This document shows, one piece after another, positions 6,866 through 23,801 of a stretch of 64,000 bases of DNA. Under the pieces are notes generated by a model. It was not told where the DNA came from. It made no database searches and saw only the letters and a program-made list of their open reading frames with translations. Every line of letters starts with the position of its first letter. Positions within the stretch are counted from its first letter, which is position 1. Both the position numbers and the translations under genes were made by a program. The DNA lies in the sequence record MN159079.1, one strand, 5' to 3'.

Positions 6866-8098
6866 TTATTTCACCTTGAAATTGATGCCGTGGATCTTAA
6901 AGAAGAACCCTTTCACCAGAGTGCAGGGATTCCCTTGGTTGACATACATGGAGTTAACCTTATGACCGCCAAGTGTACCCGTCGTCTGGATCGGGTAAAT
7001 CCTGTTGATCCTGAGGTCCACGTTTAAGATACGCTGCTTTATCCCGTAAGAACGCATATACGGAACAGGGAACAGCCCGTTGTCGAGCACAATAGGATGC
7101 TGGAAGCGTTCCTCGGTGTGCATCGCACTGGGGTAGAGGAAAGTGGTCAAAGGGACCAAATCCACTGCCAGTGTTGGGTTATCAATCAGCACGAGGAAGG
7201 AGTTGTGCATAGTCAGTGCTTCTTCCTTATACTGATCAAGTTTCGTCATATCCTTAAGTTCCGGAGTGACGGTATAATTACTGAATACCTGGTGATGACG
7301 CATCGCATCAAAACCATGAAGTCTTACTGAAAGATGATCAGAACTCACTCGGTCCAACATATCCTGGTCAACAAGCAGTTGACCATTCACAACAATCCAA
7401 ACGGTCCTGTTGTCAAGCTTGTTTGCACCGACCTTGATCTTCCAACGTCGTTCACCATTACTAGGTACGGTGGTCAGCATATCCTTGGTGATCGGCAGTG
7501 TGGTGACTTTACCGAGCTTCTCAAAGGACATAGCGCCGATACGAAGATCCTGTTTCTTCTTGATGTAGTCATTCCCGGCACCAAGGAGATAGATCCCATC
7601 TTGACGCCCGATAGACCTGTAGAAGACACCGTTACATGTGAACAAAGCGTGATCAGATTGCTTGTTGTAATTGATCCCTGACTTGTACATGTAGTGCTTT
7701 ACCAGGAGGTCAGGAGCCCCGTCTGACAAGAGGTCTGACTGTCTATCCTTTGTAAGGTTTATATCACCTGGGAAGTGGAAATAGCCGTGAGTGAACAATC
7801 GTTCCAGTTTCACGTACTCGGCTTTATCTTCCGGGATGACATTGCTGGTTTTCAAAATGGTTGTTTTCTGAAGATCCAACCACTCTTGGATGACAAGATC
7901 AGAGTTAGCGATGAAGCTAGCGTGATGGTCTTCCAAAGTGATACAAATCTTCTCTTTGTACATTTCATCATTGACGACTATGTAGAGCATGGAGAACAGT
8001 TTATCCAGGTCACCTAGTCGGTAATTAGAAATGTCTGCAAAGTGGTAACCAGGAATGTATCCCTTATACCGCCCAACCGCATATAAGTATTTGTACAT
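6866..8098 (-). CDS. Conserved phiKZ-like virion structural protein, 410 aa
   Basis: Long ORF with LFTCNG.F, VNGQL and HP..L.NG..P.Y motifs recalled from phiKZ-like structural proteins. Confidence 0.6.
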   Translation of the reverse strand: MYKYLYAVGRYKGYIPGYHFADISNYRLGDLDKLFSMLYIVVNDEMYKEKICITLEDHHASFIANSDLVIQEWLDLQKTTILKTSNVIPEDKAEYVKLERLFTHGYFHFPGDINLTKDRQSDLLSDGAPDLLVKHYMYKSGINYNKQSDHALFTCNGVFYRSIGRQDGIYLLGAGNDYIKKKQDLRIGAMSFEKLGKVTTLPITKDMLTTVPSNGERRWKIKVGANKLDNRTVWIVVNGQLLVDQDMLDRVSSDHLSVRLHGFDAMRHHQVFSNYTVTPELKDMTKLDQYKEEALTMHNSFLVLIDNPTLAVDLVPLTTFLYPSAMHTEERFQHPIVLDNGLFPVPYMRSYGIKQRILNVDLRINRIYPIQTTGTLGGHKVNSMYVNQGNPCTLVKGFFFKIHGINFKVK

Positions 8099-8128: not shown

Positions 8129-8884
8129 ATGGCAAACAATTCAATTAAGGGGCTTCCGGTCTACCCCTGGAACCCTTTCAACGACATGACGATTAACGAG
8201 ATCAAAGGTGAAATCGTTAACGTGCAACCGACTCCTGGTGGGTCTATCATCATTCCACGCTGCGCTCCCTTCTTTGCGAGAGGGCTCAAAGTCATACACC
8301 GTGCATCGGGACGGGAATTGGAATTGAAGAAGGGTGAATTCTCACTTCTTTATCCGTTCGGCTCTTTCATTTCCAGGTACAGCCAACTGGTGTATAGTGG
8401 GATACTGATCAACGGTGTCACAGAGCCCACTAACTTTGAGCTTGAGTACAGCACCATAGGCGGTGATTTCGTACTGGATGATGTTGCTTACGCTCAGGCT
8501 GTGGCCAACACACTCACCAGCCCACGACGCGCTGATTGGAGCGAACTTGTTAACCTTCCGCCTGCCTGGCCGGCAGATCCCCACGATCATCCCGCATCGG
8601 ATACCTTTAACTACTCCGATATGATCATCGCCCTCCAAAGTTACATCGACGCCATGACTGGCGGCGGTAACCCGGAATCTATCAAGTCCTTACTGGATGA
8701 TCACTTGAAGGCTGACCTCCAGGACGCTCACAAAGCCACACTGGGCGATCTCGGGATTAAGAATCTCCAAGACTGGGCTATGGCAAAACAAGAAGATATT
8801 GGCGGTAATTCAGAAGAGTTGCTCGTTAATATCAACGTGCTGAAGGCTGCGATCAGGCAACATGCCGCAGGGCAATGGCAATAA
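8129..8884 (+). CDS. Tail fibre/baseplate-associated structural protein, 251 aa
   Basis: Start re-called to ATG 8129 (SD GAGG). IIPRCAPFF, YSTIGG and W..L.N.P..WP...H.HP motifs are shared with the N-termini of the downstream fibre paralogs. Confidence 0.7.
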   Translation: MANNSIKGLPVYPWNPFNDMTINEIKGEIVNVQPTPGGSIIIPRCAPFFARGLKVIHRASGRELELKKGEFSLLYPFGSFISRYSQLVYSGILINGVTEPTNFELEYSTIGGDFVLDDVAYAQAVANTLTSPRRADWSELVNLPPAWPADPHDHPASDTFNYSDMIIALQSYIDAMTGGGNPESIKSLLDDHLKADLQDAHKATLGDLGIKNLQDWAMAKQEDIGGNSEELLVNINVLKAAIRQHAAGQWQ

Positions 8885-8943: not shown

Positions 8944-11900
8944 ATGAATAGAATTGACGTTCCTTTATATTCCTTGGATCTCACAGGAGAATCTCCTTTC
9001 AATAGAGTAATCAGGGAAGAAGGTGTTCGTTCAAGTAACCAGTTGGTTATACCTAACGCAGCACCTTTCTACATTGATTCCGTGACCATAACTCATATGG
9101 ACGGAACACCAATGGACCTCGGAAAGGACTATGACTTCTATGGGATCCTGGCAAATCTCACAGAGTACACGGCAAAGTCGGTCGGGCTTTACATTCGTTT
9201 CCTGAATGATGATATCAAGGAATGGATAGTTAGTTATAACACCGTAGGTAACTTCAACAAGATTACCACGGAAATTCTGAACATGCTCAAAGCGATCACG
9301 GAGGACGATCGACCGGTACACTGGGATAACATAGACAACAAACCACTCTGGTTTGTTCCCGAGCTCCACCAACATGATTACACGTTCCATTTCTTCGGGT
9401 TTAGTGACCTGGCGAGAGAACTGCTCCGTGTTCAGCAATACAGCGCCCTTTTCAATGACGGTGTTCAGACCGATCTGGACATGTTCAACATGCGCCTGGA
9501 GAGCTACATATCCGAATACCAGGGGGTGTTGAATCGGCTTATAACACGCCACGACACCAGTAAGGCCGACCCTCACGGCGTCTGGAAGACGGACATCGGT
9601 CTTGACAACGTGGACAACTTTAAGACCGCAACCCTCCAAGAAACTCTGGAAGGACTTCGTGACGATCTCCACATCACTGTCAACAACGCAGCACAGGCAA
9701 TAGAAGTTAGTAACGAGAGACTTTTCCCTGCCGGGACACTCCCTTTACTCCGTTATGGTAACGATAGTTTCATCCCCCCGAAAATAGACGGTTCATTCGA
9801 GGGAATGGGTGGTTACAACTTTAGACTCGGTGTNNNNNNNNNNNNNNNNNNNNNNNNNNNNNNNNNNNNNNNNNNNNNNNNNNNNNNNNNNNNNNNNNNN
9901 NNNNNNNNNNNNNNNNNNNNNNNNNNNNNAAAGTTAGTAACGAGAGACTTTTCCCTGCCGGGACACTCCCTTTACTCCGTTATGGTAACGATAGTTTCAT
10001 CCCCCCGAAAATAGACGGTTCATTCGAGGGAATGGGTGGTTACAACTTTAGACTCGGTGTCGTACGTGAGAGTAGTGGGGAGATGGTCGCACTCCAACAT
10101 CGCAATGATGGTGTGGTCCGCGGACTCTACTTCCTGAAGTGTGATGACCCTTATGCCAAAAATCCCAACTGGTCGTATACCAGTTATCGGTACATTCACC
10201 CGACGGCTGTTGCCGACGGTGCCAACATTGACTCTGTGATCAATGGTAGTGGCCAGTATGTGTTGGTGATTGGGGACTCGGTTAAAGGAATTTGGTACTG
10301 GTGTGAAACCAACGGGACCCTGGATCCCTCTAAACACGTGCTCAAACGCATCTCTGGTGATTTCATCAATGTCAATCACGGGATGGGTCAATCACTCACC
10401 CTACTGGTTGATAGTGATTACGCTGACCAGTGGTTTATCATGGGCTCCATGACTAATTCCGAAGTTAAGGCAGCTAGACCTGACTATCCCACATCGGTTG
10501 AGACAGGTGGTGGTGACCGTAGTGTAGAGGCAATGAGATTCTTCTCTTGTATTGCGTCATCTACAGCCGTGAATCTCTGTACAGTGGATTTCACGGAGCA
10601 AGACGGTAAAACACCCAAGGATAAAATCTGGATGCCTTACACCAGAACCGTGGTAACTCCTAACACGATCACTGGTTATGAGGCGGAGTACGAAACCCCG
10701 GCAACGACTGTATGGAATTATCGCGGTATCCAGGGTATGTGTAAAAGGACGGCAGTACCGAGAGAGTACGCATTCCGTCTGTACAACTATATCTATCGGA
10801 TAGAGAAGACTACCGGCCTGGCTTCTGGTTCACGTCCTGTCTGGAAGGGGACATTGAAACTCGATCCGGCGACCAACACCGTAAAAGTACTCCCCGGTCC
10901 CGGTGAGAAACGATATCGGATCTCCATTAAACCGAATGACGATACCGGCGTTGAAAATGATCTCTTTGTAAACTGGAAGACGAGTTCTCTAGCCACGATC
11001 ACCGATGATGTTTCAAGAGGATATGCCGAATTCGACCATAACGGTAATGCGATATACGTATCTCCCGTTGTATCCGGATCGTTACCTGGGCAAGTGACCC
11101 TTTATAAAACAGACGCGCCACTAACTCCAGAAAGATTAATTGGTGCCAGGTCTGACTTTGACTATGTTGAGGTCAGCAAAACACCCATGCCGGAGGTTAA
11201 CCCTGCTGGGCTGGCTGTTGGACTCACGGAACCAATGTCAATTCTCGGAGACACCAATCGTCCTGAAACGGCTATTGTTCTCGGTACCCAACTCACTATG
11301 GAAAATGGCGAGATAAAAATAGAATGGATTGGTCGTCCCACCCCATTCATGAATCCTGACTGGACTGGTAACACTTCGTTACTCCAACCCATTACAATAG
11401 GTGGTGTTCAGGTTAAGGGGTACCCTCTGACACCGGAGACGTACACGTGTTCCATGGGGCCGTACAAGTTCTGGTCTTTACACGGTTTCTCAACGATACC
11501 GGAAGTTAGTAGTTCTGTAAGAGAACGCTGGACGAGGAGCTGTGGTGCCGATGGGATGGCGAACATCAATGGAACACCAACCTCCCAAACCGATTTCTTG
11601 TTCCCGAAGATTTGCCGGCACGAGATTGTTGGTAGGGAAGTCAGGATTATTCCCGTTGAAGTTTACAATGTCGAGAGTATGTTGTCCGGCCAGATCAAGA
11701 CTTATTTGGATGGAAAGGGGATAAATACAGAAACCATCAAAATGACTTGGACGATGAGCCCCGTTTACAACCGGAAGGGAGAAGAGCGTGTACTTCTCAT
11801 GGTTTCCAGTCGTAAGCCAGGTGACGGACTTCGCGATGTAGAAGCTATCGTTATGGTGGGTCAATTGAAAGGTGTTGGTAATCCGATTACCAAAGATGGT

Positions 11901-12788
11901 TATAAATACTACGAACACTCTACATTTGACTTTGGTAACAAACACCACATCGGTCCCGCTTTAGTCGCTCCGGCCACAGCACTTGCCCCTGGCGGTCCAA
12001 TCCATGCGTGGCGGGCAGGGTTCTGTGTAGCTGACCTTAATACCGGAACCGCACCCGGGTCCGCAGATCAAACCTGTATTTATCTTCGAACAATACATCG
12101 ATACGCCATTGTCGGAGACACAGTCCCCATAAACCTGGTCATCGAAATGGAGAACGACTTCTCAATTTCCCGCATGGCTCCCAAACCAACTGGTTCGTCA
12201 CCTTACTCGGCCAGTATTTGTGCTTCTCCCGGGAACACAATGGGATACATATCGTCTAACGACGTCAACTTGGCTCGTGGGGCGTGTGTGGTGGCAGGTG
12301 GACTTCGTTGGGGGACCAACCGGTTTGATATCTTGACCTCGGCCGATCCAGGTGCTGGCGTGGAGAAACGGTTGTTGATTAGTAACTTACTCGTTTCAGC
12401 GTTCACTGTTTATTTCCAGGCGGCTGATAACGTCCTGTTGGGTGGTAGAGCGTATGATGTAAAGGCAACCTATATCGATATTCGGGATTTTGATAGCAAC
12501 CCAGCTAACAAAACCTTCTATATTTATCTTAGGTTTGCTGGTGGTCAACCGACCTACCAGATCGAACGAGCACCTACTCCGGAAACAGCAACGAGTGCTT
12601 GCGTTGCCGTTGTAAAGACTGGTGCTACCAGAATAGAGACGGTAGTTCCCTATAATCGGTTCTTGATGAACGGAGTGGAGATCAGTAGTAAACGGCGAGG
12701 GGCGGCAATACTTTCCCCGGCCGGTAGTATCTTCGATAAGGGTTCTTTGGCACCCATCATCAGTGAATCTGATTTCTTGCCAGGGTAA
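8944..12788 (+). CDS. Tail fibre-like protein 1 (phiKZ gp131 family), about 1205 aa after removing an assembly artefact
   Basis: ORF-track entries 8944..10014 and 10032..12788 are one gene. 9704-9833 is duplicated at 9931-10060 across the N-gap; collapsing 227 bp joins them in frame (287+918 aa). Shares NPHGV..IGL.NVDN..TAT, P.I.GSFEG.G and C-terminal F..NG..IS..RRG motifs with the next gene. Confidence 0.8.
9704..10060. other. Scaffold gap (96 N) with 130-bp duplicated flanks; assembly artefact
   Basis: Exact direct repeat 9704-9833 = 9931-10060, offset 227 bp. Confidence 0.92.
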
Positions 12789-12860: not shown

Positions 12861-15800
12861 ATGAAAGATATCGAGATTGTCAAAATTGACTACTCGGCAG
12901 CGGATCCAGCATACAAGGTAAAAGAGAAGCATGTCATAAAAGACATTTCTGTACCATGGCTGGTACCCGACCAAGGGCCGTATTACACAACGGGGTTGCG
13001 TTTGTACAATGCAGGAACTCCCCTCACTTATGAAAAGGACTACATCTACGACACTCCGGCTACTGAACTCACTGACCGGCTGGGTCGAGATGTTTATCAC
13101 TTCATCATTCTGCGTGATCACATCGTGTCCAGCGCAACAGCAATTGATATTGAATATCAAAAGGTTGGAAACCCCATGTTGGGGAGGAACCAACTGTTAC
13201 AGATGCTGGACGACCTGATCATCTCCGGTAAACCTATTGACATAACAACCAGTGTCATAGGGATGCCGGAAACATTCCCTAGCGCCAAGCACTCCATGGA
13301 TGTTACCAAGCCAGAGGAAGTTGTAGGGTTTGGTAACTTGATGATGTTGTTCAGTATTCTGTCAGGGCGTGTCGCCGGTAATGGCGATTACGTTAAGGAA
13401 TTACTGGATAAGCTCAAAACTGACAACTTCAAGAGACTGGACTACATCCAGAACCTGCAATGGAATGCAATTATCAACCACACCAGTCGGGTAAGAAACC
13501 CCCATGGGGTTAAAGCCGATAATGTCGAGTTGGGTAAACTGGAAAACTACAAAACAGCCACCCCGGCGCAGGAGATAGAAGGGACACGTTCTGATCTCTA
13601 CTCTACTCCACATGGACTGGGAGAGATAATTCGTGAAACAGAACCAGACTCAGAAGAATTCGTTTTCCAGAACGAACTTCCCTTCAGTTATTATGGTTCT
13701 GGTCTTTATCTTCCTCCCCCAATATCTGGGTCTTTCGAAGGTCTGGGAGCCGATATAGAAAACGGTACCTTTGTGCAAGAAGGTAACGGGTGGGTGGTAG
13801 GTCTTTCGCGAATGTTCGATGGACGGTTGCGGAACCTCTATTACATTTATGATCAGGGATTGGACGACATCCCTAACGTCGGAAATTTCAGGAACAGTTA
13901 TGTGCAATACCGACACCCTACCATAGACGCAGCGGGTTGTTCAGCGACCATGACGATGTCTGGGTCCGGTGCCGATGTACTGGTGGTGGGTGACCAGGAG
14001 AAAAACCGGTACTGGATAACAGATCCTAATTCCACTTTGGATCCTACGGCCCACGTGTTCAAGGAAATGGACCTTAGTGTCTATTCTAACCGTAAAGATT
14101 GGCAGTACTGGGTGAACGTATCCTCTAACATTTTCAAAGTTGGTGGGTACTTCTACCTGATGGTCTATACCGACGAAAATATAGAAGGTATCGACAGCAC
14201 CGGATACGTGTTAGCAAATGCGGCGGGTTGGTTGTGTCGTTGTCCCGTGGCGGATCTGACCAACCCGAACAAACCGACGATGGTTTTCCAGGCTGTTAAT
14301 CTTACCTACGACAACTTGCGTAGGGAAAGACGTGTCAACCAGTCCGCATTTAGCATTGATCGTTGGGAGCGCAACGCTAACGGATTTACGTCAGGGCTCG
14401 GATGCCGATTTGGATCCAATACCGTGGAACTGATGTCACACCGTCGACGAGCAATGATTTTCTGTCCCAACCCCAACAATGAAAACGTCATCGCGGTGAA
14501 AATACTCTTCATTGTTAGAACGGTAAGAAGGACACAGTTTGGTAACGTGGCAAAGCAGGTTACAGTGGCGGCGGATTACACATTTGATGCGACGACCAAC
14601 ACACTGGCGCTTAGTCCCAAATGGAAGTACATAACCTTAAATGAAACAAATGAAGTCCCTACCAACCTCGATCAAGAATCTCTTAACCGTCAATGGTTGA
14701 CGGCAGGAATGGTGGCCGGTAACAGCGGTCGAAAGGGGATTTTCACATTTGGCGGGACTCGTATAAATGTTTCGTTTATACCAGGCTATGGTTACGTCGG
14801 TCAATATAGTAGCGCGGATGGTGGTTTGCCGCATGCTATCTGTAAGGCCCTGGTAAACCCGTCCAGGGATCCGTCCAGGGACTGGGAGTATTTCCAGCAA
14901 CCCACAACTTACATCATGCCTAATGGAGAAAGTAACGACGGAACCAACGGTATCAGCTATGAAACACCATTTGGTTTCATGGCGTATCCGGCCTGGAACG
15001 TTGATGTTTTCAACATCAACGGTGTGAATAGTCCCACTCCGGTAGAGTTGTTCATGGGCTTCAGCCATGAAAAAGCCGAAACCTTTTTCTATCGTGAATG
15101 CGAACCAGGTGACGGGACCAAGTACCTCCAACGACCAGAGTTGAAACTTCTGTCCGGTGTTACCCCCTACTCCAGACAAATGAACAGTCGGTACGGGACC
15201 GTAAAGGGGCTACATCCTTACATGGGTAGGGTGAATAATCCTAGATCCAGGGACAAGTATAGTGCTGAATACGGGTGCTTCTCAGTCCACTGGAATGGTA
15301 TCCCTGCAAAACCACCTAGGTTCACTATAGTTCCTGGTCGCAATGGAAACCCCAGTGCCCCTGTCTATGGTCCTGACAGAGGAATCTACATCCCTCTGAT
15401 ATGTGAGCATGAAATAGCCAACGGGGTCATGACGGTTCGCTCTACTCCCGCCGGGTCCGTGTATCTTCCCGCTTATATATGGAGCGAATGGAAAGATCGC
15501 ATCACAAATGGGGAATTATGGCCGTCAATAGACATGTCTGTCGACTTTTACCTCTGCGCCAAAAAGGATGGTGCACCTCTTGGTCGCAGACATTCGTATG
15601 CCGTATTCACGTACCATACGACGGATAACCCCTTGGATATTAAACAGGTGATCTCTAAGTTCACTTGGGACGTTAACGGTCAAATGCCGGACGGGACACC
15701 CATCATGAGGGTCAGTTCCGAACAGTACCCGTTCACTTCCGGTATCACAGGAAATCCCCTTAAGCCCAAGAACTCACTGGCTGAAGGTGAAACCAACATC

Positions 15801-16592
15801 CACATTCCTGCCGTTGGTAATGACGTGACACACCAACCTAATGGTCAGTGGAGCTACATTGATCCTAGTGCACTTTCTAGGATGTCATTGCAGGTCTTGG
15901 AATATCCAGAGTTGGGTCCCGATCAATTCACCATTTGGGGGTATCCGGGATGGAGGTTATCAACCGTTGCGTATTCACGGATCTTCACGTTTAACGACAC
16001 CAACGTTCCGTCACACACACCTAACAATACCAAGGCATATTCACCCTGGACTGGTGCTTATGTTGGGTATGGTGCGTTCCAAATCGCTCATCCCGATTAC
16101 GACATGTGTGCTGGTCTGAACTTTAATGATGTTGGTGGTGGTGCCATGAACTTGGTTGTTGCCAATGGCGGCCGTCAAATACTCATGGGAAGCGTATTCT
16201 CAGTGGGTAACTGGAGTGTGTTCGTAAACAGTGATGTGACGGTGACCTTTAACGGTTACTCCATGACCGCTGTTAAACGTAACTTTGACCTTCGTGATTT
16301 CAGTGAGAAGTACAGGGATAATGTGTTCTACATATACTGTGTCGCTAGAGGGTCTAAAGCCGAGTATGAACTCACCCACATACTGAGACACTCCAGAGGC
16401 GATTGCTTGTTGATATGTAAGATCACAACTGGTTCCCAAGGGATCTCGTTGATTGAACGTTATCAGCCTTTTGCCATCAATGGCTCCCCTATGACACCTG
16501 TGCGGGATGCAGGCATTCCATACACGACCGGTAACATGTTCGAAGATGGTGAATGGAGTCACATCAAGAAATCAGAGTTGTATATCGACTAA
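12861..16592 (+). CDS. Tail fibre-like protein 2 (phiKZ gp131 family paralog), 1243 aa
   Basis: Collinear with the previous gene: NPHGV.A.NVELGKLENYKTAT, LPPPISGSFEGLG, YVQYRHP, TLDPTAHVFK, C-terminal FDLRDF...FYIY...FAING. The central region is divergent. Confidence 0.8.
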   Translation: MKDIEIVKIDYSAADPAYKVKEKHVIKDISVPWLVPDQGPYYTTGLRLYNAGTPLTYEKDYIYDTPATELTDRLGRDVYHFIILRDHIVSSATAIDIEYQKVGNPMLGRNQLLQMLDDLIISGKPIDITTSVIGMPETFPSAKHSMDVTKPEEVVGFGNLMMLFSILSGRVAGNGDYVKELLDKLKTDNFKRLDYIQNLQWNAIINHTSRVRNPHGVKADNVELGKLENYKTATPAQEIEGTRSDLYSTPHGLGEIIRETEPDSEEFVFQNELPFSYYGSGLYLPPPISGSFEGLGADIENGTFVQEGNGWVVGLSRMFDGRLRNLYYIYDQGLDDIPNVGNFRNSYVQYRHPTIDAAGCSATMTMSGSGADVLVVGDQEKNRYWITDPNSTLDPTAHVFKEMDLSVYSNRKDWQYWVNVSSNIFKVGGYFYLMVYTDENIEGIDSTGYVLANAAGWLCRCPVADLTNPNKPTMVFQAVNLTYDNLRRERRVNQSAFSIDRWERNANGFTSGLGCRFGSNTVELMSHRRRAMIFCPNPNNENVIAVKILFIVRTVRRTQFGNVAKQVTVAADYTFDATTNTLALSPKWKYITLNETNEVPTNLDQESLNRQWLTAGMVAGNSGRKGIFTFGGTRINVSFIPGYGYVGQYSSADGGLPHAICKALVNPSRDPSRDWEYFQQPTTYIMPNGESNDGTNGISYETPFGFMAYPAWNVDVFNINGVNSPTPVELFMGFSHEKAETFFYRECEPGDGTKYLQRPELKLLSGVTPYSRQMNSRYGTVKGLHPYMGRVNNPRSRDKYSAEYGCFSVHWNGIPAKPPRFTIVPGRNGNPSAPVYGPDRGIYIPLICEHEIANGVMTVRSTPAGSVYLPAYIWSEWKDRITNGELWPSIDMSVDFYLCAKKDGAPLGRRHSYAVFTYHTTDNPLDIKQVISKFTWDVNGQMPDGTPIMRVSSEQYPFTSGITGNPLKPKNSLAEGETNIHIPAVGNDVTHQPNGQWSYIDPSALSRMSLQVLEYPELGPDQFTIWGYPGWRLSTVAYSRIFTFNDTNVPSHTPNNTKAYSPWTGAYVGYGAFQIAHPDYDMCAGLNFNDVGGGAMNLVVANGGRQILMGSVFSVGNWSVFVNSDVTVTFNGYSMTAVKRNFDLRDFSEKYRDNVFYIYCVARGSKAEYELTHILRHSRGDCLLICKITTGSQGISLIERYQPFAINGSPMTPVRDAGIPYTTGNMFEDGEWSHIKKSELYID

Positions 16593-16597
16593 ACCAC

Positions 16598-16624
16598 GGG
16601 GAGGGAGACCTCCCCCATTTATTT
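16598..16624 (+). terminator. Intrinsic terminator
   Basis: GGGGAGG-GAGA-CCTCCCC followed by CATTTATTT. Confidence 0.7.
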
Positions 16625-16640: not shown

Positions 16641-19600
16641 ATGTATGTAGATAAGGATAAACCCCAACCCCCACTGGACGAACGTACCGATCCGGTAGGG
16701 GTCGTACTTGAAGCGTTCATTGAGAACGATCGTAAAGTACAAGAAGTGACGGGTGATATCGTTGACACGATAAAGGACATCCAGAACGCGCAGACGTCAG
16801 CCACTCAGAAACTTGACAAGTTTGATGCCGACGTTAAGGCAAAACTTAAGACCCACGTTGATAAACGCGGGGCAGTTCACGGGGAGAATAAGCACACAGT
16901 AGGATTGGGGAACAAGGATAACTACCCAATGGCTACAATGCAGGAACATGTGGACGGTAAGGCTCTAGCTTACGCACACCCCTCCGGTCTCCGCGAGTTG
17001 GTGGAATCCAGAGTGAAAAGTGATCCTACCAAGTATATTCCTGCGCGAGTAATACCTCTGGCTTCTGGTGGGATGCTGGGTGAAGTTCCTCAGTACCACA
17101 TGGATTTGAGTATTGGTGAGCTCGACCAATCCAAACAGGACCCCAATCTTCATTTAGGGGAAACCCCTTGGGAATTTAGCACCACCTCAGGTGCTCTGAT
17201 ATTCCCCACAATCAATAACGCACCTCACCATGGGCGATACACCCAAGTCCCCCAAGGAATGAACGTGTTCAGCCATGGCCCCCATGGTGGGACAAAAATC
17301 CGAGTCTACAATAAGACTCTGGATAGCCGAAGAACACGTCCGTCGTTTATTCGTGGTTGGGGTGATGCTTCAGGTGCTCCCGAGCAATTAGGGACCTGTG
17401 TCAAAGCGGGGAGTTCACTCTTCGACAAGACACACGTTATTTACCGTGAAAATAACTGGCTGCTTCGGTCCTTTAACAAAAACGCACTCCCCTCCGATGT
17501 GGTAGAGATATATAAGTACTATTCGAAAGAACCAGAAGGTATCTTCGAGTACGCAGAGGGATTTCTCTTTAACTATTGGGTGACACCCCTCAACGCCATC
17601 GTCCCCGGCGGATCAGTCGCCGAACCACATATCAAGCTGGATATGCGGTGCTTTAAAATGGACGTGGCTGATTACCGTGCCGCCCAAGGAGCGGTCAGCC
17701 TGAATGGGGAACAGCGGTCATCCCTTGGGGATGCAACTCAAACGTTCTCTGCGACGGTACCTGCGCACAACAAAATGGTTTTTGGAAGTCAAGCTGGTTC
17801 CGGGGTAGGTTCTATTTATATCAGGCTGAATCGTCTTTTGACACTCCCTGGCGGGATGGAGAATGCGTTTCTTGCCAATCTGAACCAAGACCTCGTGCGA
17901 CAGTTAACCTTCGCGTGGCGTAATCGCATGAGCTACCACGGTCTGTTCAGGATCCCTGTAGGTTGGTGGAACAAACAAAAAACTAAATACTGGCACGCCT
18001 GGGTCGATTTCGAGATTATCGATCGTCCTTTCTATACTGGACTCAATAACCAACTCCGGGTGTTGACAGCAGATCCGTCTTGGAACACAGTCCAGACTGT
18101 CGACGCTAACTGGAACGTGACCGGGTCAGGAATGTTCAAAGAGTACCGCGCTGACATCAAAGATAACCCGATGCACCCCTTGGCGCTCGGTGGTATCTTC
18201 GAATCCCAAGGCGGCCACATGAAGACCTACACCTTGTATGGAAGACAGTATACTGCCTATCACCAACACGACATGGGTCAATCGCTGGATTTCATCACTA
18301 AGGGTAACGTCCCTCTTCCTCCTCCGACCCAGAGCGAGTACAGTGCCAGGTCCACCTTGAACGGTACCGGTCTTTATGGGGACCACCTCCGACACATTCC
18401 TGTCGATATCGACCAACAGACCGGTTTGGTGACGTACCTTACTCACGTTCGCGATTATCGTGATCGTTATCGGTGGGCCCGTGTGGTCATCGATGGAGAA
18501 CAGGAAGTCGTCCAGGACAGGTTCTACGGGAACTACCTTGGTCCCAAAGTCCAGAAATTGGACTGGCTCCCAGGGATCAAAACACCCAGACCGTTCGTTA
18601 TTTCCAACGATGACTTCCAACCCACGATGAACATCAACGGGTTGGTCTTTACAGCCGAAAACAAGTTTCTTGGCTTTGGTAGTTTCAGAACCAATGAAGC
18701 TAACCAGGATTACCTTGAATACGTTGACGAGATTAGGTTGGATGAACAAGTTATTGCTTGGGTAAAAAGCAATGCAGGTGGCTTCACCAACCCTGATTTA
18801 CTCTTCTTCTATTTCAGAGGGAGTTTGTTCTGGTTCTGTCGTTGTTCCGACCCCGCCGAATATCCGGCTGACGGAAAGGATTGTTACTACGGCGTAATAA
18901 AGGACTGTGGTGTCAAACTCGATGGTGGTGGTGCCCGTGTCATGGGTCCGAATGGTTCTATCGCTGATTCAATCACGATTAACAAATTCAACTTAATGAC
19001 CAAAAATAGTTTACTGGTCGATCAAGCGGAAGTTTACGGGATAGATTCCCTCTCCGGTCGTGATGTTTACATCATGATGACCCAGCACCATAACGATTCA
19101 GGAACCCAAGATCATGACGTAATGGTCAACATGGGTCCTTTCAACAATTTCTATATTGAAATGAAGTTGATACGTTCTGGTGATGGCACCATGACGTTTA
19201 GACCGAAGCCAGAGGCGATCGATCCGGTATTCCCTTACACAGAGAGTAATGGTTTCCAAATAGACTATGACGCACACACTCTGTATGGGACAAAAATTCC
19301 GGAAAGATTCCACGTAAACTACCAGTCCCCCGTGATGTTGAAGAAAGGGATGTGGAGCTACCGTAAAACCCCCAATAACTTTGGGTTCTTTACACGTCGA
19401 CATGGGTTCGTTACGATAACCGGTTGTGTGATGACCAGTTACTATGGGACAGACGTTTATCCCATGGGATCAGTCCTCACGGTTTCCGGGAAGAACACGG
19501 TGGTTAAGAAGCCGGTCCAGTTTAGTCCCGACGACATTGATGGAAGTTCGGAACTGTTCGTCAGAATAGTGGGTGATGAACCTGTACTCTACGGTACGAA

Positions 19601-22600
19601 TTTTAATCCCAATGGTTACGAGGTAGAACCACATAACGGCGCTGCCCCAGCTGGTTGGGGGTCTGGTTCGAACTTCTATTATTACGATCCGGCTAGTTGG
19701 AGAAATACTTTCATGCCGGTGATAGATGGACGGCGGATGAGTTGGTATGGTTACGGTTCGACCGTACCCGTTCTTCTGGGGAAACCTGGGGAAGGACTTC
19801 CTATCAACAGGTATTACTTTGGAACCCAAAGTACCCAGATGACCTGGGACACTGCTAAAGGAAGGGTGGTGAAGTTTGATGCCGAAATAGCCACCACTGT
19901 GGCTGTAAACGGAAACGCAGAAGTGACCGGAAGTGCTACGCAGTATGTTATCCCTGCACAGTACACCGGGGTGGTGACAATCGACCTTTACAACGCCAAT
20001 AAACTCATCTGGGCACCAGGACTGACAAACCTGATCCGGTTGGGGAGCGAAATAATGGAGGTTGACTTCTCTGGTTCAGACCAGTTTACGATTTCGGCTC
20101 CATTACCAAAACGTGTCACCAGTCTGAAACGTGCGTTCTATAAAGCTAAGGGTGCGAGTTATCCTGGGCTTCAAAATTGGAACGTGACGGGCGTCACCGA
20201 CTTCACCGAGTGTTTTGCTGAAACCACCGCATTCAACCAAGATCTTAGCAATTGGACCTTCGTTATGGGGAGGACATTGCGAGGGATGTTCCAGAACGCC
20301 GTGGCATTCAACCAACCTGTTCCCGGAACTTGGTTCCAATACATCCTGGATTGTTCCTACATGTTTGCTGGTTCCGGTGCGTTTAACAAACCTCTAACTG
20401 GAACCGCGTTACAGTGTAAAACAGCCATCGGTATGTTCCAAGGCTCCAAAGCGTTCAACTCCAGTATTGATGGACTCAAGTTCCTGGAAATTGTGGATAT
20501 CTCTGATTTCTTCAGGGAGTCGGTCGTTTTCAACCAATCCATAAACGGATTTGACGTTTCGAAGGTTGAGCGCGCGGAAAGGATGTTCCAAGGTGCGAAA
20601 GGGTTCCTCCAACCCATCACACTCAACATGAAGCAATGTCATTCAGTGTCAGGGATGTTCAAAGATAACCTTGTGTTTAATGCACTTGTGAATATCTCAC
20701 TCCCTATCTGTACTGACTTCAGCCAAATGTTCATGGGGACCAAGCTGTTCAACCAGAAATTGCCTGCATGGTCATTTAGCCCCAGGACAACATTGCGAGA
20801 AATGTTCAGCGGGTCCAAAGCCTACAACCAGTCAATGGACCATTGGATGATGGAACGTGTCGCGTCCATTTCCAGAATGTTCCAGTTCGCCGGTGCTTAC
20901 CAGCAACCTATCAAGACCTGGACCTTCTATAAGTTGGTTGACTGTTCTTACCTGTTCGCTAATTCCTCGTTCAATGCGGATGTCAATGATATAAAGTGGC
21001 CAAGTGATCCAACCCTGGGGATTAACGCCACTGGTATCTTCTATTACAATTTGGTTTATAACCAACCACTGAGTAAATGGAATACCGTTGCATTCAAATT
21101 GTTCAATGGTATCTTTAATCTGGCAAGATCGTTTAACCAAGACATTTCAGCCTGGAATGTCTCCAATGGTGAAAACTTTGAAAACCTCTTTAAAGACGCC
21201 ATCGAATTCGATGGGGATATTTCCAACTGGAATGTAGGTAAATCCAAAACGTTCTCTTACTTCGCAGCGAATGCCGTCAAGTTCAAATCCGACCTTTCCA
21301 AGTGGGACGTGAGTTCTTGTTTCAACTTCGAAGCGATGTTCAGACACTGTTTGGCTTTCGATAGCGATATCTCTGAGTGGGATGTCTCCAACGGTACCAC
21401 TTTCGAGTGGATGTTCGATGGATATTCGTTAACCGAAACCGTCACACCTGAATACTTTATGATCTTCAACCAAGATCTGAGTAAATGGAACGTTGGAAAG
21501 GGTGTCCGCTTTAATGCCATGTTCCGCAAGTGTCAATTGTTCACGTCTGACCTTTCTGGGTGGGATATGACAAACGCGCAAGAAGTCGGTGCGATGTTCC
21601 AACATTGCTACGAGTTCCAGTCGGAACTTGCTTCTTGGAAAGTGGCGAAGTTCACTCATGTTCGTTACATGTTCTTCCACGCCCACAACTTCAACGCTCC
21701 TATCCCTGATTGGGACGTGTCAAGGTGTACTGAGTTCGACCAGATGTTTAGTTACACCTACATGTTCAACCAGGACTTGAGTAACTGGGATATGAGCAAT
21801 GCCAGAAACCTCAATAGGATGTTCGATGTTGCGGTGGCCTTCAATGGCAATGTTTCTACTTGGGATGTTTCCAATGTAGTGACTTTCTGGGGAATGTTTA
21901 GGGATGCCGCAGTGTTCAACGGTGATCTCTCTGGCTGGGTTACATCCAATGCGAATGATTTCAGTGGTATGTTCCAAGACGCGCTCTCGTTTGATCGGGA
22001 TTTGAGTGGATGGGATGTCTCCAAGGGGATCAAGTTCAATGCGATGTTTAGGTCGACCAAGTGCAATTTCGGTATGAACAACTGGAACGTGGGTAACGCC
22101 ACTACCTTTGCCGAAATGTTCAAGGGGAACATTGTCTTTAACCAGAAACTGTCTACTTGGAAAACAGGTAAAGTTACTGATATGGCACATATGTTCTCTG
22201 GGTGCAAGGCACTAACGGATCCGGCGATCGGTAATTGGGATACTGGGCGTGTGGAACTTATGAATCAAATGTTCTTCGATTGCCCTCTTTTCAATTCCGA
22301 CATCTCTGGTTGGAACGTATCCAATGTGACAAACTTCTCCAGGATGTTTATGAGCGCGTTTAAGTTCAACGCTAACTTGTCGACCTGGAATGTTTCCAAT
22401 GGTGTGACTTTCGAAAGAATGTTCCACACAACGGAACTCTTCAACCAACCTCTGAATACCTGGAGGATGGTGAAAGGCGAAGATTTCACAGATATGTTCT
22501 ACGGAGCAAAAGCGTTTAACCAACCCATCAATGACTGGGGTATGGCCAGTGCTAAGACGCTCAGCGGAATGTTCCGTGGTTCCCCTGTGTTCAACCAGCC

Positions 22601-22769
22601 TCTGGATAAATGGAACACTAGTAATGTAATTAATATGGGTTCGACGTTCCGTGACGCCAAACAGTTTAACCAGGATCTGAGTATGTGGGATACCTCCAAG
22701 GTAACCAACCACGATGCCTTCGATACTGGAGCGACTGCTTGGACCAAGCCACGTCCTAACTTCGCTTAA
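16641..22769 (+). CDS. Tail fibre-like protein 3 with C-terminal DUF285/BspA-like repeat solenoid, 2042 aa
   Basis: N-terminal AVHGENKHTVGLGNKDNYPMAT fibre motif. The family C-terminal signature (PVIDGRRMSWYGYGSTVPVLLG) sits internally near 19.7 kb and is followed by about 33 repeats of about 25 aa. Confidence 0.8.
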   Translation: MYVDKDKPQPPLDERTDPVGVVLEAFIENDRKVQEVTGDIVDTIKDIQNAQTSATQKLDKFDADVKAKLKTHVDKRGAVHGENKHTVGLGNKDNYPMATMQEHVDGKALAYAHPSGLRELVESRVKSDPTKYIPARVIPLASGGMLGEVPQYHMDLSIGELDQSKQDPNLHLGETPWEFSTTSGALIFPTINNAPHHGRYTQVPQGMNVFSHGPHGGTKIRVYNKTLDSRRTRPSFIRGWGDASGAPEQLGTCVKAGSSLFDKTHVIYRENNWLLRSFNKNALPSDVVEIYKYYSKEPEGIFEYAEGFLFNYWVTPLNAIVPGGSVAEPHIKLDMRCFKMDVADYRAAQGAVSLNGEQRSSLGDATQTFSATVPAHNKMVFGSQAGSGVGSIYIRLNRLLTLPGGMENAFLANLNQDLVRQLTFAWRNRMSYHGLFRIPVGWWNKQKTKYWHAWVDFEIIDRPFYTGLNNQLRVLTADPSWNTVQTVDANWNVTGSGMFKEYRADIKDNPMHPLALGGIFESQGGHMKTYTLYGRQYTAYHQHDMGQSLDFITKGNVPLPPPTQSEYSARSTLNGTGLYGDHLRHIPVDIDQQTGLVTYLTHVRDYRDRYRWARVVIDGEQEVVQDRFYGNYLGPKVQKLDWLPGIKTPRPFVISNDDFQPTMNINGLVFTAENKFLGFGSFRTNEANQDYLEYVDEIRLDEQVIAWVKSNAGGFTNPDLLFFYFRGSLFWFCRCSDPAEYPADGKDCYYGVIKDCGVKLDGGGARVMGPNGSIADSITINKFNLMTKNSLLVDQAEVYGIDSLSGRDVYIMMTQHHNDSGTQDHDVMVNMGPFNNFYIEMKLIRSGDGTMTFRPKPEAIDPVFPYTESNGFQIDYDAHTLYGTKIPERFHVNYQSPVMLKKGMWSYRKTPNNFGFFTRRHGFVTITGCVMTSYYGTDVYPMGSVLTVSGKNTVVKKPVQFSPDDIDGSSELFVRIVGDEPVLYGTNFNPNGYEVEPHNGAAPAGWGSGSNFYYYDPASWRNTFMPVIDGRRMSWYGYGSTVPVLLGKPGEGLPINRYYFGTQSTQMTWDTAKGRVVKFDAEIATTVAVNGNAEVTGSATQYVIPAQYTGVVTIDLYNANKLIWAPGLTNLIRLGSEIMEVDFSGSDQFTISAPLPKRVTSLKRAFYKAKGASYPGLQNWNVTGVTDFTECFAETTAFNQDLSNWTFVMGRTLRGMFQNAVAFNQPVPGTWFQYILDCSYMFAGSGAFNKPLTGTALQCKTAIGMFQGSKAFNSSIDGLKFLEIVDISDFFRESVVFNQSINGFDVSKVERAERMFQGAKGFLQPITLNMKQCHSVSGMFKDNLVFNALVNISLPICTDFSQMFMGTKLFNQKLPAWSFSPRTTLREMFSGSKAYNQSMDHWMMERVASISRMFQFAGAYQQPIKTWTFYKLVDCSYLFANSSFNADVNDIKWPSDPTLGINATGIFYYNLVYNQPLSKWNTVAFKLFNGIFNLARSFNQDISAWNVSNGENFENLFKDAIEFDGDISNWNVGKSKTFSYFAANAVKFKSDLSKWDVSSCFNFEAMFRHCLAFDSDISEWDVSNGTTFEWMFDGYSLTETVTPEYFMIFNQDLSKWNVGKGVRFNAMFRKCQLFTSDLSGWDMTNAQEVGAMFQHCYEFQSELASWKVAKFTHVRYMFFHAHNFNAPIPDWDVSRCTEFDQMFSYTYMFNQDLSNWDMSNARNLNRMFDVAVAFNGNVSTWDVSNVVTFWGMFRDAAVFNGDLSGWVTSNANDFSGMFQDALSFDRDLSGWDVSKGIKFNAMFRSTKCNFGMNNWNVGNATTFAEMFKGNIVFNQKLSTWKTGKVTDMAHMFSGCKALTDPAIGNWDTGRVELMNQMFFDCPLFNSDISGWNVSNVTNFSRMFMSAFKFNANLSTWNVSNGVTFERMFHTTELFNQPLNTWRMVKGEDFTDMFYGAKAFNQPINDWGMASAKTLSGMFRGSPVFNQPLDKWNTSNVINMGSTFRDAKQFNQDLSMWDTSKVTNHDAFDTGATAWTKPRPNFA
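20160..22766 (+). repeat. About 33 tandem ~25-aa coding repeats, consensus FNQDLSxWDVSNVTxFxxMF (DUF285 / bacterial surface protein 26-residue repeat)
   Basis: Counted by eye from the translation. The first ~12 units are degenerate and the last ~21 are canonical; one unit carries an insertion (YSLTETVTPEYFMI). Confidence 0.9.
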
Positions 22770-22786
22770 CAAACGTAATTAAAGTA

Positions 22787-22822
22787 ACCCTCACCTCCCC
22801 GTCAAGGGAGGTGAGGGTCTTT
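22787..22822. terminator. Bidirectional intrinsic terminator
   Basis: ACCCTCACCTCCC-CGTCAA-GGGAGGTGAGGGT between convergent genes, with A/T tracts on both sides. Confidence 0.85.
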
Positions 22823-22832
22823 ATCTTATTTG

Positions 22833-23801
22833 TTAGGTTTGGGCTACATCAGTAACACCGTTACCATTCTGAACTTTGCCGTGCTTGTGAGAATCGAGAT
22901 CGTTACTACCTGATTTCACACCAGACTGACCAGTAACAGTACCACCAGAAGTAACATTACCAGTATTGGTAAAGTTACCTGTTTGATCCGTGTCACCTTC
23001 ATGTGTTACGTTCCCCTTCACAAAAATGTTGGGTGATCTGAGATTGGTTTGTTTCCCAATGTCAAGGTTCATACTCTCTTCACATTGGATATCCAGCACC
23101 TTCGTTTTGACCGCAATCTTCTCCTTAGCCCTGAGAAGCATTGTATCTTCACAAGTCGCCGTGATATTCTTCTTTTCAATAGCGACAATGGACTTCTCTT
23201 GGTTTTGGAATGCCCACATATGTTCCATGCTATTGAGTACGAAAGCGTTCTCTTCACCATCAACCAATGAGAAACCACCATTACCAGTGTCCAGCGTAAT
23301 CGCATAACTGGTCGGTTCTCCATTACCTTGACCCGTAAGCAGTTGGAACTTTTTGGTATGAGTACTGATCAAGAAGATATAATAGTTGTCAGTATTGAAG
23401 GGAGAATCTTCATTTACCTTGGGAGATGCGGAAATCGCCCAGATGATGGTTTCAAGGCGAAGCGTTCCATCCATACCGAAATACATCCAACGATACGTGT
23501 TGGTACCCTTGAACTTATAAACAACTACTTTACTACCTTTCCGTACATCGGGGGAGGTGATCCGGTTAGTGTTAAATGGGAGCCAGATGCAAGGAGTGCC
23601 ATTCGAGCGTAAAGCTTTACTGGAGTGTGTATCTCCTGTAGGGGATTGAGTTGTTACCTCAACATCTTCTACTGATGCTTGTAACCCGCCATCCGCTTCC
23701 GGGAAAAGTGATGGAATATAAACCAACACCTCATCGGTATTTGTTTGTTTATCTTCCAATACTTCGCCAACACCGAAGCATTCTAAAACGTTATCGATCA
23801 T
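22833..23801 (-). CDS. Baseplate central spike (phiKZ gp164 / P2 gpV / phi92 gp138-like), 322 aa
   Basis: N-terminal OB-type region (W.P.N.NR.T.PDVRKG..V), beta-helix-like V/T/G-rich repeats, and a C-terminal LDSHKHG HxH metal-binding apex. Confidence 0.8.
   Translation of the reverse strand: MIDNVLECFGVGEVLEDKQTNTDEVLVYIPSLFPEADGGLQASVEDVEVTTQSPTGDTHSSKALRSNGTPCIWLPFNTNRITSPDVRKGSKVVVYKFKGTNTYRWMYFGMDGTLRLETIIWAISASPKVNEDSPFNTDNYYIFLISTHTKKFQLLTGQGNGEPTSYAITLDTGNGGFSLVDGEENAFVLNSMEHMWAFQNQEKSIVAIEKKNITATCEDTMLLRAKEKIAVKTKVLDIQCEESMNLDIGKQTNLRSPNIFVKGNVTHEGDTDQTGNFTNTGNVTSGGTVTGQSGVKSGSNDLDSHKHGKVQNGNGVTDVAQT

What the first reader, a model, noticed from the sequence alone, without database searches (positions are those of the whole stretch)
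19800..22769. Tail-fibre paralog extended by a ~33-unit DUF285/BspA-like solenoid after the family's normal C-terminus
Seen: fibres 1 and 2 end shortly after F..NG..IS..RRG..I...G / FAINGSPMTPVRDAGIPYTTG. Fibre 3 has the equivalent segment (PVIDGRRMSWYGYGSTVPVLLG, ~19.72 kb) internally and continues for ~1000 aa, mostly 25-aa repeats with a fixed scaffold and highly variable intervening positions. Known: DUF285 repeats are LRR-like surface-protein repeats of Mycoplasma, Listeria and Bacteroidetes, not the usual trimeric beta-helix receptor-binding domain. Inference: a long monomeric solenoid receptor-binding or adhesion arm acquired by domain accretion. The gradient from degenerate to canonical repeats suggests recent expansion at the distal end.
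Basis: partly seen in the sequence, partly recalled or inferred. Interest (0 to 1): 0.66.

Follow-up and report, generated by a model that had tools for sequence, protein, structure and literature searches.

The report
Jumbo-phage tail protein with LRR-like arm
A giant Aeromonas phage encodes a 2042-residue tail-module protein whose last ~1000 residues are about 34 DUF285 repeats predicted to form a leucine-rich-repeat-type solenoid. Related jumbo phages carry the same arm with 0 to 61 repeats, so it is an old, length-variable, probably host-binding appendage and not a recent add-on.

Summary
The window is Aeromonas jumbo phage D9. ORF 16641-22769 (+) encodes 2042 aa: a ~1060-aa body, a small beta-sandwich, then ~34 units of 25 aa (Pfam DUF285 E 1e-204; PARCEL TIGR02167). 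AlphaFold gives a continuous solenoid (pLDDT 85), and all 50 best PDB matches are LRR proteins (Z up to 18).

- A "normal C-terminus" is real. PS1-type orthologues at the same syntenic slot end at D9 residue ~1060.
- Kinship with the two upstream "fibres" shows only in a ~100-aa N-terminal module and at fold level.
- The arm is not a recent accretion. 39 of 50 family clusters (OBP, N1M2, Kc263 and others) carry it.
- D9's units are only ~47% identical in DNA, with no internal DNA repeat.
- dN/dS is 0.05-0.2, which indicates purifying selection.

What does change among relatives is the number of units: 0, 2-3, ~20, 34, 45 and 61. The changes are whole-unit indels and recombination inside the array. 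LAh10 is D9-like up to about aa 1400 and D3-like beyond.

The function is inferred, not shown: a host-adhesion or receptor-binding arm on a baseplate-associated protein. Sister-phage records already label the gene "BspA family LRR surface protein". Interest is moderate.

The parts
16641..22769 (+). Whole gene (2042 aa plus stop) = D9_0218, orthologue of LAh10_51, D3_0120, D6_0119, OBP_145 and N1M2_118
16641..17090 (+). N-terminal module, aa 1-150: long helices plus a conserved H-G-E-x-K-x-T-V-G-L-G-N-K motif. It is shared with fibre 2 (aa 173-275) and with PHROG tail/virion families. Probably an attachment or oligomerisation module.
   Evidence: Model pLDDT is low here.
17148..18359 (+). First beta-propeller-like domain of the body, aa ~170-573
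   Evidence: PDB matches are weak (Z <= 6.9: WD40 proteins, propeller lectins).
18360..19445 (+). Second beta-propeller-like domain, aa ~574-935
   Evidence: Z <= 5.7
19446..19820 (+). Last beta-rich stretch of the body, aa 936-1060. It contains the segment at which PS1-type orthologues terminate (the family's short-form C-terminus).
19830..20075 (+). Predicted beta-sandwich linker domain, aa ~1064-1145. It is conserved in CF8-type orthologues.
20076..21089 (+). N-cap and ~13 proximal, degenerate DUF285 units, aa 1146-1483. This part is 96-100% identical between D9 and LAh10.
21090..22697 (+). ~22 distal, mostly canonical 25-aa DUF285 units, aa 1484-2019. This is the part that differs among close relatives.
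22698..22766 (+). C-terminal cap, aa 2020-2042 (motif ...A-W-T-K-P-R-P...). The same cap closes the 2-3-unit CF8 orthologue.
22787..22818 (.). GC-rich hairpin of 13-15 bp, terminator-like on both strands, between this gene and the convergent baseplate gene
12861..16592 (+). "Fibre 2" (1243 aa). It shares the N-terminal module by sequence and the body at fold level.
10032..12788 (+). "Fibre 1" fragment (918 aa). It shares its C-terminus and a middle block with fibre 2. Its 5' part is cut off by an N-run in the record.
22833..23801 (-). Baseplate assembly protein (phrog_3216). It is the conserved convergent neighbour in all relatives examined.

Best explanation
D9_0218 is a conserved late structural protein of the tail/baseplate module of a clade of phiKZ-like (nucleus-forming) jumbo phages.

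Its first ~150 residues are a helical module with a tail-fibre-type motif. That module is shared with the neighbouring large virion proteins and most likely anchors the protein to the baseplate. Residues ~170-1060 form a body rich in beta-propeller-like domains. The same body fold is seen in the two upstream paralogues.

Behind a small beta-sandwich, the chain continues as a single LRR-type solenoid of ~34 DUF285/PARCEL turns. At ~0.48 nm per turn, a textbook value and not measured here, the arm would be roughly 16 nm long.

I propose that the variable, solvent-facing positions of this solenoid form an extended adhesion or receptor-binding surface for the Aeromonas envelope. I also propose that specificity and reach are retuned in evolution by whole-unit indels and by recombination inside the array.

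Shown here: the architecture, family membership, predicted fold, synteny, the orthologue length series, the mosaicism and purifying selection. Inferred: presence in the virion, attachment through the N-terminus and binding to the host.
For: Family and fold:
- DUF285 and PARCEL HMMs score far above their cut-offs.
- The AlphaFold model of aa 1050-2042 has pLDDT 84.8 and forms a continuous solenoid.
- All 50 top VIA matches are LRR proteins. Examples are LIC11098 (Z 18.3, 380 residues aligned at 4.8 A), internalins, TpLRR and Bacteroides BspA-like surface proteins.

Tail context:
- Four consecutive + strand genes share a phrog_2163 / tail-fibre N-module.
- The baseplate assembly gene is the fixed convergent neighbour in D9, D6, LAh10, D3, OBP, PS1 and CF8.
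- RefSeq calls the PS1 and pAEv1810 orthologues "tail protein".
- The N-part model matches, at fold level, OBP G9IA35 (1246 aa, the size of OBP_143, annotated "putative virion structural protein"), PS1 A0A514TV38 ("virion structural protein", 862 aa, the size of PS1_0136) and Joad/CBB/SEGD1 virion structural proteins. E-values run from 1e-9 to 1e-21.

Functional constraint and modularity:
- dN/dS is 0.05-0.2 along the array.
- LAh10 is 96-100% D9-like up to aa ~1400 and 97-98% D3-like afterwards.
- LAh10 and D3 differ by a 1092-nt block whose junction matches two different D3 units.
- Sister proteins differ by indels of 25, 50, ~125 and ~325 aa.
- The orthologue series has 0, 2-3, ~20, 34, 45 and 61 units.

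Precedent: two DUF285 proteins are found in purified AaV virions (PMC7507832).
Against: - There is no virion proteomics for this protein or any orthologue in the papers I could reach.
- In the OBP record the two upstream genes are called "putative virion structural protein", but OBP_145 is only "hypothetical". A 1713-aa virion protein would normally be easy to detect.
- EM of N1M2 showed no visible tail fibres (PMC7058600).
- PS1-type phages lack the arm and CF8-type phages have only 2-3 units, so the arm is dispensable for the basic particle.
- There is no sign of positive selection on the variable positions.
- No binding partner is known for any DUF285 array.
- The fold evidence is predicted, not solved.
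Confidence: 0.6

Rival explanations
1. The solenoid is mainly a passive shaft or spacer that sets the reach of the protein. The actual binding or enzymatic site lies in the beta-propeller-like body or in the conserved C-terminal cap.
For: - The same C-cap closes arrays of 2-3 units and of 34 units.
- Array length varies 0-61 units while the body is always present.
- The body's weak structural matches include propeller lectins and glycoside-active propellers, at Z 5-6.3.
- dN/dS is low even at the 'variable' positions.
Against: - The fold matches for the body are below the level that means more than a common fold (Z < 8).
- Pfam finds no lectin or glycosidase domain.
- LRR solenoids are typically binding scaffolds, from general knowledge.
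- Whole distal array blocks are exchanged between lineages. That is the pattern expected of a specificity module rather than a neutral spacer.
Confidence: 0.17
2. The protein is not a virion component. It is made during infection and acts elsewhere, for example as an LRR-type protein-binding factor, or as a surface or secreted factor released at lysis.
For: - OBP_145 is annotated only "hypothetical" next to two genes annotated "putative virion structural protein".
- No tail fibres were seen on N1M2.
- DUF285 arrays occur in 113 phage records in very different contexts.
Against: - The N-terminal module matches tail and virion PHROGs and is shared with the neighbouring structural proteins.
- The position between the fibre-like genes and the baseplate gene is strictly conserved.
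- The sequence shows no signal peptide or lipobox, and the Mbov_0838 lipoprotein model scores below its cut-off.
- The body is a fold-level paralogue of proteins annotated as virion structural.
Confidence: 0.13
3. One reading: a recent domain accretion in this phage, with ongoing expansion of canonical repeats at the distal end.
For: - The gradient from degenerate to canonical units is real.
- Short-form orthologues exist.
- Length changes among relatives cluster in the distal half.
- D3's extra block contains short near-exact internal DNA repeats, including one exact 40-nt match.
Against: - The fusion is present in 39 of 50 family clusters spanning many host genera.
- D9 and LAh10 have no internal DNA similarity at E < 1e-5.
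- TRF finds nothing in the array.
- Units are ~47% identical in DNA.
- D6 has an array of identical length.
- CF8-type short forms are nested among long forms.
Confidence: 0.05

Closest known systems
[quoted passage not shown]
   Same: The repeat is the same ~25-aa unit, and both HMMs score far above their cut-offs. The pattern of a fixed hydrophobic scaffold and variable hydrophilic positions matches the description by Roske et al. 2010 (PMC2996958). One antisense frame is nearly open, as expected of 'palindromic' coding.
   Different: The array is fused behind a ~1060-aa phage tail-module body instead of a lipoprotein or secretion signal. The Mbov_0838 lipoprotein model scores below its cut-off (389 < 500). 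The best non-phage relatives, from Bacteroidota and prasinophyte algae, are only ~25-30% identical over comparable coverage.
Orthologues in other phiKZ-like jumbo phages: LAh10_51, D3_0120, D6_0119, OBP_145, N1M2_118, Kc263, Yubaba 'outer surface protein', pEt-SU, AH04 gp144, CF8_0134, PS1_0137 (phrog_17273)
   Same: The N-part, the syntenic slot and, in most of them, the DUF285 arm and C-cap are the same.
   Different: The unit number differs: 0 in PS1, 2-3 in CF8, ~20 in OBP, ~29 in N1M2, 45 in LAh10 and 61 in D3, against 34 here. The distal array is of different ancestry in LAh10 and D3.
Classical LRR binding proteins (Listeria internalins, Leptospira LIC11098, Treponema TpLRR, plant LRR receptor kinases)
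   Same: The predicted solenoid fold is the same. Z is 12.9-18.3 for LIC11098, the internalins and the plant receptor kinases over 317-527 aligned residues, and 10.8 over 191 residues for TpLRR.
   Different: Sequence identity is 5-13% and there is no sequence-level match to any solved chain. The repeat motif is different. Ligand binding is proven for those proteins and untested here.
Modular phage tail fibres and receptor-binding proteins with a conserved N-terminal anchor and exchangeable C-terminal specificity modules
   Same: The N-terminal module is conserved and shared among neighbouring genes, and the distal part is mosaic and recombining. The same logic was noted for other Aeromonas jumbo-phage RBPs in PMC10673249.
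   Different: The distal module is a single-chain LRR-like repeat array of variable length. It is not a trimeric beta-helix, a knob or a depolymerase.
Other viral DUF285 proteins: a 19-kb PARCEL ORF of Vibrio phage pir03, Lak megaphages, cyanophage ACG-2014f, Campylobacter CP21/CPt10, and Aureococcus virus AaV_052/AaV_382
   Same: The repeat family is the same. The AaV proteins are packaged in virions.
   Different: The N-terminal contexts are unrelated, and none has a demonstrated function.

Membership tests
DUF285 (Pfam PF03382) | Whole-protein score above the gathering threshold of 25 bits | tested here: met
   667.7 bits, E 1.2e-204, 11 stretches
PARCEL repeat (NCBIfam TIGR02167) | The 26-residue repeat HMM scores above its cut-off of 30 bits, in tandem copies | tested here: met
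   73.8 bits. There are 34 tandem units, most of them spaced 25 aa apart.
PARCEL (Roske et al. 2010) | 'Palindromic' coding: the antisense strand is also open and encodes a repeat | tested here: inconclusive
   One antisense frame has 12 stops in 890 codons, against 22 and 80 in the other two. I did not test whether the antisense product fits the motif.
Mbov_0838 PARCEL surface lipoprotein (NF045896) | Score at or above the 500-bit cut-off, and a lipoprotein signal | tested here: not met
   389.3 bits, below 500. The N-terminus is a tail-fibre-type module with no lipobox.
LRR solenoid fold | A continuous right-handed solenoid of short strand-plus-loop turns that superposes on solved LRR proteins | tested here: met
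   This holds for the predicted model only. pLDDT is 84.8. All top 50 VIA matches are LRR proteins, with best Z 18.3. Foldseek E-values are weak, at or above 1.6e-3.
BspA of Tannerella forsythia (the protein behind NCBI's product name) | Homology to BspA itself, and its adhesin activity | not tested
   The name comes only from database product lines of relatives.
phrog_17273 (OBP_145-like jumbo-phage proteins) | A full-length match of the N-part | tested here: met
   1406.5 bits; protein aa 1-1276 align to profile positions 1-1279. There are 50 clusters in the word search.
Phage tail fibre / receptor-binding protein | An N-terminal module shared with known tail proteins, and a location in the tail/baseplate gene block | tested here: met
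   phrog_2163, 3285 and 11029 match aa 26-115. hhalign to fibre 2 gives 93% probability.
Phage tail fibre / receptor-binding protein | Presence in the virion and binding to a host receptor | not testable with these tools
   No proteomics was found for any orthologue.
Phage tail fibre / receptor-binding protein | Homotrimeric assembly | not tested
Paralogue of 'fibres' 1 and 2 (P0002, P0003) | Sequence homology beyond the N-terminal module | tested here: not met
   BLASTP and hhalign align only aa 38-144 to fibre 2, and nothing to fibre 1.
Paralogue of 'fibres' 1 and 2 (P0002, P0003) | The same body fold | tested here: met
   Foldseek against BFVD gives a 1243-aa entry (E 2.6e-20), OBP G9IA35 of 1246 aa (2.2e-16), a 918-aa entry (3.3e-14) and PS1 A0A514TV38 of 862 aa (7.7e-9). 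I assigned these entries to the upstream genes from matching lengths and organisms, which is an inference.

The most novel reading that the evidence does not exclude
In a whole clade of nucleus-forming jumbo phages, the host-recognition device is a single-chain LRR-type (DUF285) solenoid rather than a trimeric fibre tip. Its length, 0-61 turns or roughly 0-30 nm, would act as an evolvable ruler. Unequal crossover between units and exchange of array blocks between phages would retune both reach (through capsule, O-antigen or S-layer) and specificity. LAh10 would then be a natural chimera that acquired the D3-type specificity on a D9-type body.
Probability: 0.25. Interest if true: 0.65.

Novelty: new variant of a known kind. 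Interest (0 to 1): 0.45.

Why it matters
Receptor-binding proteins of phiKZ-like (Chimalliviridae-type) jumbo phages are poorly defined, and no DUF285/PARCEL array has a known ligand in any organism.

This family offers a tractable test case. The gene has a fixed position and a conserved anchor and body. A natural series of arm lengths exists (0, 2-3, ~20, 34, 45 and 61 units). A natural chimera, LAh10, recombines the D9-type and D3-type arrays.

If the arm is the host-binding element, two things follow. It would give DUF285 repeats a first assigned function. It would also add an LRR-type, length-tunable module to the known repertoire of phage receptor-binding architectures, which is useful for predicting the host range of Aeromonas phages proposed for aquaculture.

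If it is not in the virion, the finding is only a large, already-annotated repeat protein.

Tried and rejected
Tools that gave no result:
- Search of the phage's own genome for further DUF285 genes: no genome is held. tblastn of the full-length protein found one place in D9, against 3 in LAh10 and 5 in D3.

Literature:
- The OBP genome and proteome paper is not held under the DOI or the PMC id I recalled, so I could not check whether OBP gp145 was seen by MS.
- A search for 'LAh10' returned only superconductor papers.
- The N1M2, ZPAH34, AerS_266, Joad/RisingSun and jumbo-phage review papers say nothing about this protein.

Structure searches:
- Sequence searches of the PDB with the arm and with the N-part profile found nothing.
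- Foldseek against the PDB with the arm gave only weak LRR hits.
- VIA-align with the N-part gave only Z < 7, so I assign no function to the body.

Ideas rejected:
- Recent tandem duplication, rejected.
- Positive selection on the array, rejected.
- A 'putative chitinase', as noted in the D6 and D3 records. Searches found no family supporting this (Pfam: DUF285 only; no glycosidase or chitinase model in NCBIfam or PHROGs).
- Recent capture from the Aeromonas host. The best cellular relatives are Bacteroidota and algae at ~25-30% identity over comparable coverage.

Full report
**Identity of the window and the gene**

The window is Aeromonas phage D9 (MN159079.1, genus Ludhianavirus, a 260-kb jumbo phage). 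The gene at 16641-22769 is 100% identical to record positions 202641-208769. It is annotated there as D9_0218, 'hypothetical protein'. The ORF is intact and encodes 2042 aa.

**The observation**

Pfam DUF285 (PF03382) matches at 667.7 bits in 11 stretches. NCBIfam finds the PARCEL repeat TIGR02167 above its cut-off. It also finds the Mycoplasma lipoprotein model Mbov_0838, but below that model's cut-off.

A unit HMM lays out 34 units of about 25 aa between aa ~1185 and 2019. The scaffold is fixed at F5, M8, F9, A12, F15, N16, D/P18, L/I19, S20, W22, V24 and S25, and the other positions vary.

I checked it with an HMM built only from bacterial and algal units, to avoid circularity. The 13 proximal units average 4.7 bits and the 22 distal units average 18.2 bits.

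**Structure**

AlphaFold2 on aa 1050-2042, with six phage orthologues in the alignment, gave mean pLDDT 84.8. The model has a beta-sandwich at aa ~1065-1142 followed by an uninterrupted solenoid.

No solved chain matches by sequence, and Foldseek gives only weak LRR and TLR hits. An exhaustive structural alignment against 48,161 PDB representatives returned LRR proteins in all 50 top rows. The best is Leptospira LIC11098, with Z 18.3 and 380 residues aligned at 4.8 A. Others are internalins, TpLRR and BspA-like Bacteroides surface proteins. 'LRR-like solenoid' is therefore supported at the level of a confident prediction.

The N-part (aa 1-1060, 30-sequence alignment) has pLDDT 77.9. It consists of low-confidence N-terminal helices and then two beta-propeller-like domains, at aa ~170-573 and ~574-935. 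The PDB matches for these are too weak (Z < 7) to infer a function.

**Is it a paralogue of 'fibres' 1 and 2?**

By sequence, only partly. BLASTP and profile comparison align just aa 38-144 to fibre 2 aa 173-279 (E 3e-4; hhalign 93%). Nothing aligns to fibre 1. Fibres 1 and 2 do share a middle block and their C-termini with each other.

At fold level, the N-part model matches several entries after its own family:
- a 1243-aa entry (E 2.6e-20);
- OBP G9IA35, 1246 aa, the size of OBP_143;
- a 918-aa entry;
- PS1 'virion structural protein' A0A514TV38, 862 aa, the size of PS1_0136;
- virion structural proteins of phages Joad, CBB and SEGD1.

Sequence identity in these matches is about 10%. I read the three genes as ancient paralogues that share an anchor module and a body fold.

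The specific claim that PVIDGRRMSW... equals the C-terminal motif of fibres 1 and 2 is not supported.

**The 'normal C-terminus' and the orthologue series**

The gene occupies one syntenic slot: after two or three large fibre-like genes, and convergent with a baseplate assembly gene (phrog_3216). This holds in D9, D6, LAh10, D3, OBP, PS1 and CF8.

| Phage | Protein length (aa) | DUF285 units |
|---|---|---|
| PS1 | 1174 | 0 |
| CF8 | 1306 | 2-3 |
| OBP | 1713 | ~20 |
| D9 and D6 | 2042 | 34 |
| LAh10 | 2311 | 45 |
| D3 | 2676 | 61 |

The PS1 protein ends opposite D9 aa ~1059. The CF8 protein is collinear with D9 through the linker, the N-cap and two units, and then joins directly to the same C-cap.

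**Age of the fusion**

A word-index search with aa 1-1100 found 50 clusters, all from jumbo-phage-sized or metagenomic contigs. Of these, 39 carry PF03382 and ten are ~1172-aa short forms.

On a maximum-likelihood tree of the N-part, the short forms make one long-branch clade. The CF8/ZPAH34 pair is sister to proteins with 16-17 units (SH-aLRT 92). The other half of the tree has 18-29 units throughout, and the Ludhianavirus-like clade has 33-61.

The tree is only midpoint-rooted, so a single ancient gain cannot be told from a loss in the PS1 clade. Either way the fusion predates the divergence of phages infecting Aeromonas, Pseudomonas, Klebsiella, Kosakonia, Serratia, Erwinia, Edwardsiella and Shewanella. 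It is not a recent accretion.

**No recent expansion in D9**

- Canonical units are on average 35% identical in protein and 47% in DNA, with a maximum of 63%. Adjacent units are no more alike than distant ones.
- TRF finds no tandem repeat in the array.
- Self-blastn of the D9 and LAh10 genes finds nothing at E < 1e-5.
- D6 has exactly the same length.

**How the array does evolve**

- Recombination inside the array. LAh10 is 96-100% identical to D9 up to aa ~1400, then 97-98% identical to D3. Megablast identity to D9 stops at nt 4243.
- Unequal crossover. LAh10 nt 6164-6233 matches both D3 6167-6236 and D3 7259-7328. That accounts for a 1092-nt block (~15 units) present only in D3. This block holds the only short near-exact internal DNA repeats seen.
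- Whole-unit indels between sister proteins. P0139 and P0141 differ by exactly 50 aa. P0006 and P0009 differ by ~125 aa. P0123 and P0124 differ by ~325 aa just before the cap. Most changes lie in the distal half.
- Purifying selection. dN/dS is 0.05 in the body and 0.09-0.20 in the array. Of the 32 D9/D6 replacements in the canonical units, 27 fall outside the eight core scaffold positions.
- Mosaic ancestry. dS between D9 and D6 jumps from 0.04 (aa 1061-1483) to 0.54 (aa 1970-2042). This points to mosaic ancestry of the tip rather than faster protein evolution.

**Function**

Nothing here shows binding or virion location. The inference rests on five points:
- the tail-type N-module;
- the fixed place in the baseplate block;
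- fold-level kinship to proteins annotated as virion structural;
- the modular, recombining distal part that is typical of specificity determinants;
- the general role of LRR solenoids as binding scaffolds.

Three points count against it:
- OBP_145 is annotated only 'hypothetical' beside two 'putative virion structural' neighbours.
- N1M2 showed no visible fibres.
- Some relatives do without the arm.

**Prior knowledge**

[quoted passage not shown] DUF285 arrays occur in 113 phage records.

No paper in the searchable library discusses this protein family, its length series or its mosaicism. The closest statements are a table entry for a 19-kb PARCEL ORF in Vibrio phage pir03 and two DUF285 proteins detected in AaV virions.

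**Limits**

- Read-level checks, the oligomer prediction and the OBP proteome paper were unavailable.
- The assignment of BFVD entries to the upstream genes rests on matching lengths and organisms.
- The solenoid length in nanometres uses a textbook rise per LRR turn, not coordinates from the model.

**Verdict**

The evolutionary reading needs correcting: the arm is old, conserved and variable in length, not recently accreted or expanding in D9. The function is a reasonable but untested inference. The scan's index shows the same stretch was also noted once from an overlapping window (s1-415824).

Noticed in passing
window 9834-9929 and 56477-56575: There are two runs of N, 96 and 99 bases long. 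The first cuts 'fibre 1' into two ORFs (8944-10014 and 10032-12788). D6, LAh10 and D3 have one 1208-aa gene there. The D9 record is labelled 'partial genome', so the 918-aa 'fibre 1' is an assembly artefact and not a shorter paralogue.
   Followed up: yes
window 20100-22772, minus strand: One antisense frame of the repeat array has only 12 stops in 890 codons, against 22 and 80 in the other two. This produces the long spurious minus-strand ORFs listed, for example 22212-22772 and 21720-22190. It fits the 'palindromic' coding property that gave PARCEL its name.
   Followed up: partly
window 22787-22818: A 13-15-bp GC-rich hairpin with T-rich tails on both strands lies in the 63-nt gap between this gene and the convergent baseplate gene. 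It looks like a bidirectional terminator. A smaller hairpin sits at 16598-16615, just upstream of the gene.
   Followed up: no
window 23822-26302 (+); L003 15989-18469: The 826-aa neighbour is SbcC/SMC-like (phrog_77 E 8e-60, weak SMC_N). [quoted passage not shown]
   Followed up: partly
window 8129-8884 (+): A 251-aa protein consists of little more than the N-terminal tail/virion module (phrog_2163 E 1e-53; phrog_23008 'tail fiber') that also heads fibre 2 and, more weakly, D9_0218. So four consecutive genes carry the module.
   Followed up: partly
L004 (phage D3) gene nt 6124-6163 vs 6739-6778, 6513-6552 vs 6663-6702: Inside the ~1.1-kb block that D3 has and LAh10 lacks there are short exact or near-exact internal DNA repeats (40/40 and 37/40). 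This is the only trace of comparatively recent intra-array duplication or conversion in the group.
   Followed up: partly
Searches gave nothing to support it: Pfam matched only DUF285, and no glycosidase or chitinase family appeared in NCBIfam or PHROGs.
   Followed up: yes
NC_048170.1 (Escherichia phage Goslar) 146286-146519: The model nucleus-forming phage Goslar has a short DUF285 match annotated 'BspA family LRR surface protein'. It may be a few-unit orthologue like CF8's. If so, the family could be studied in a well-developed system.
   Followed up: no
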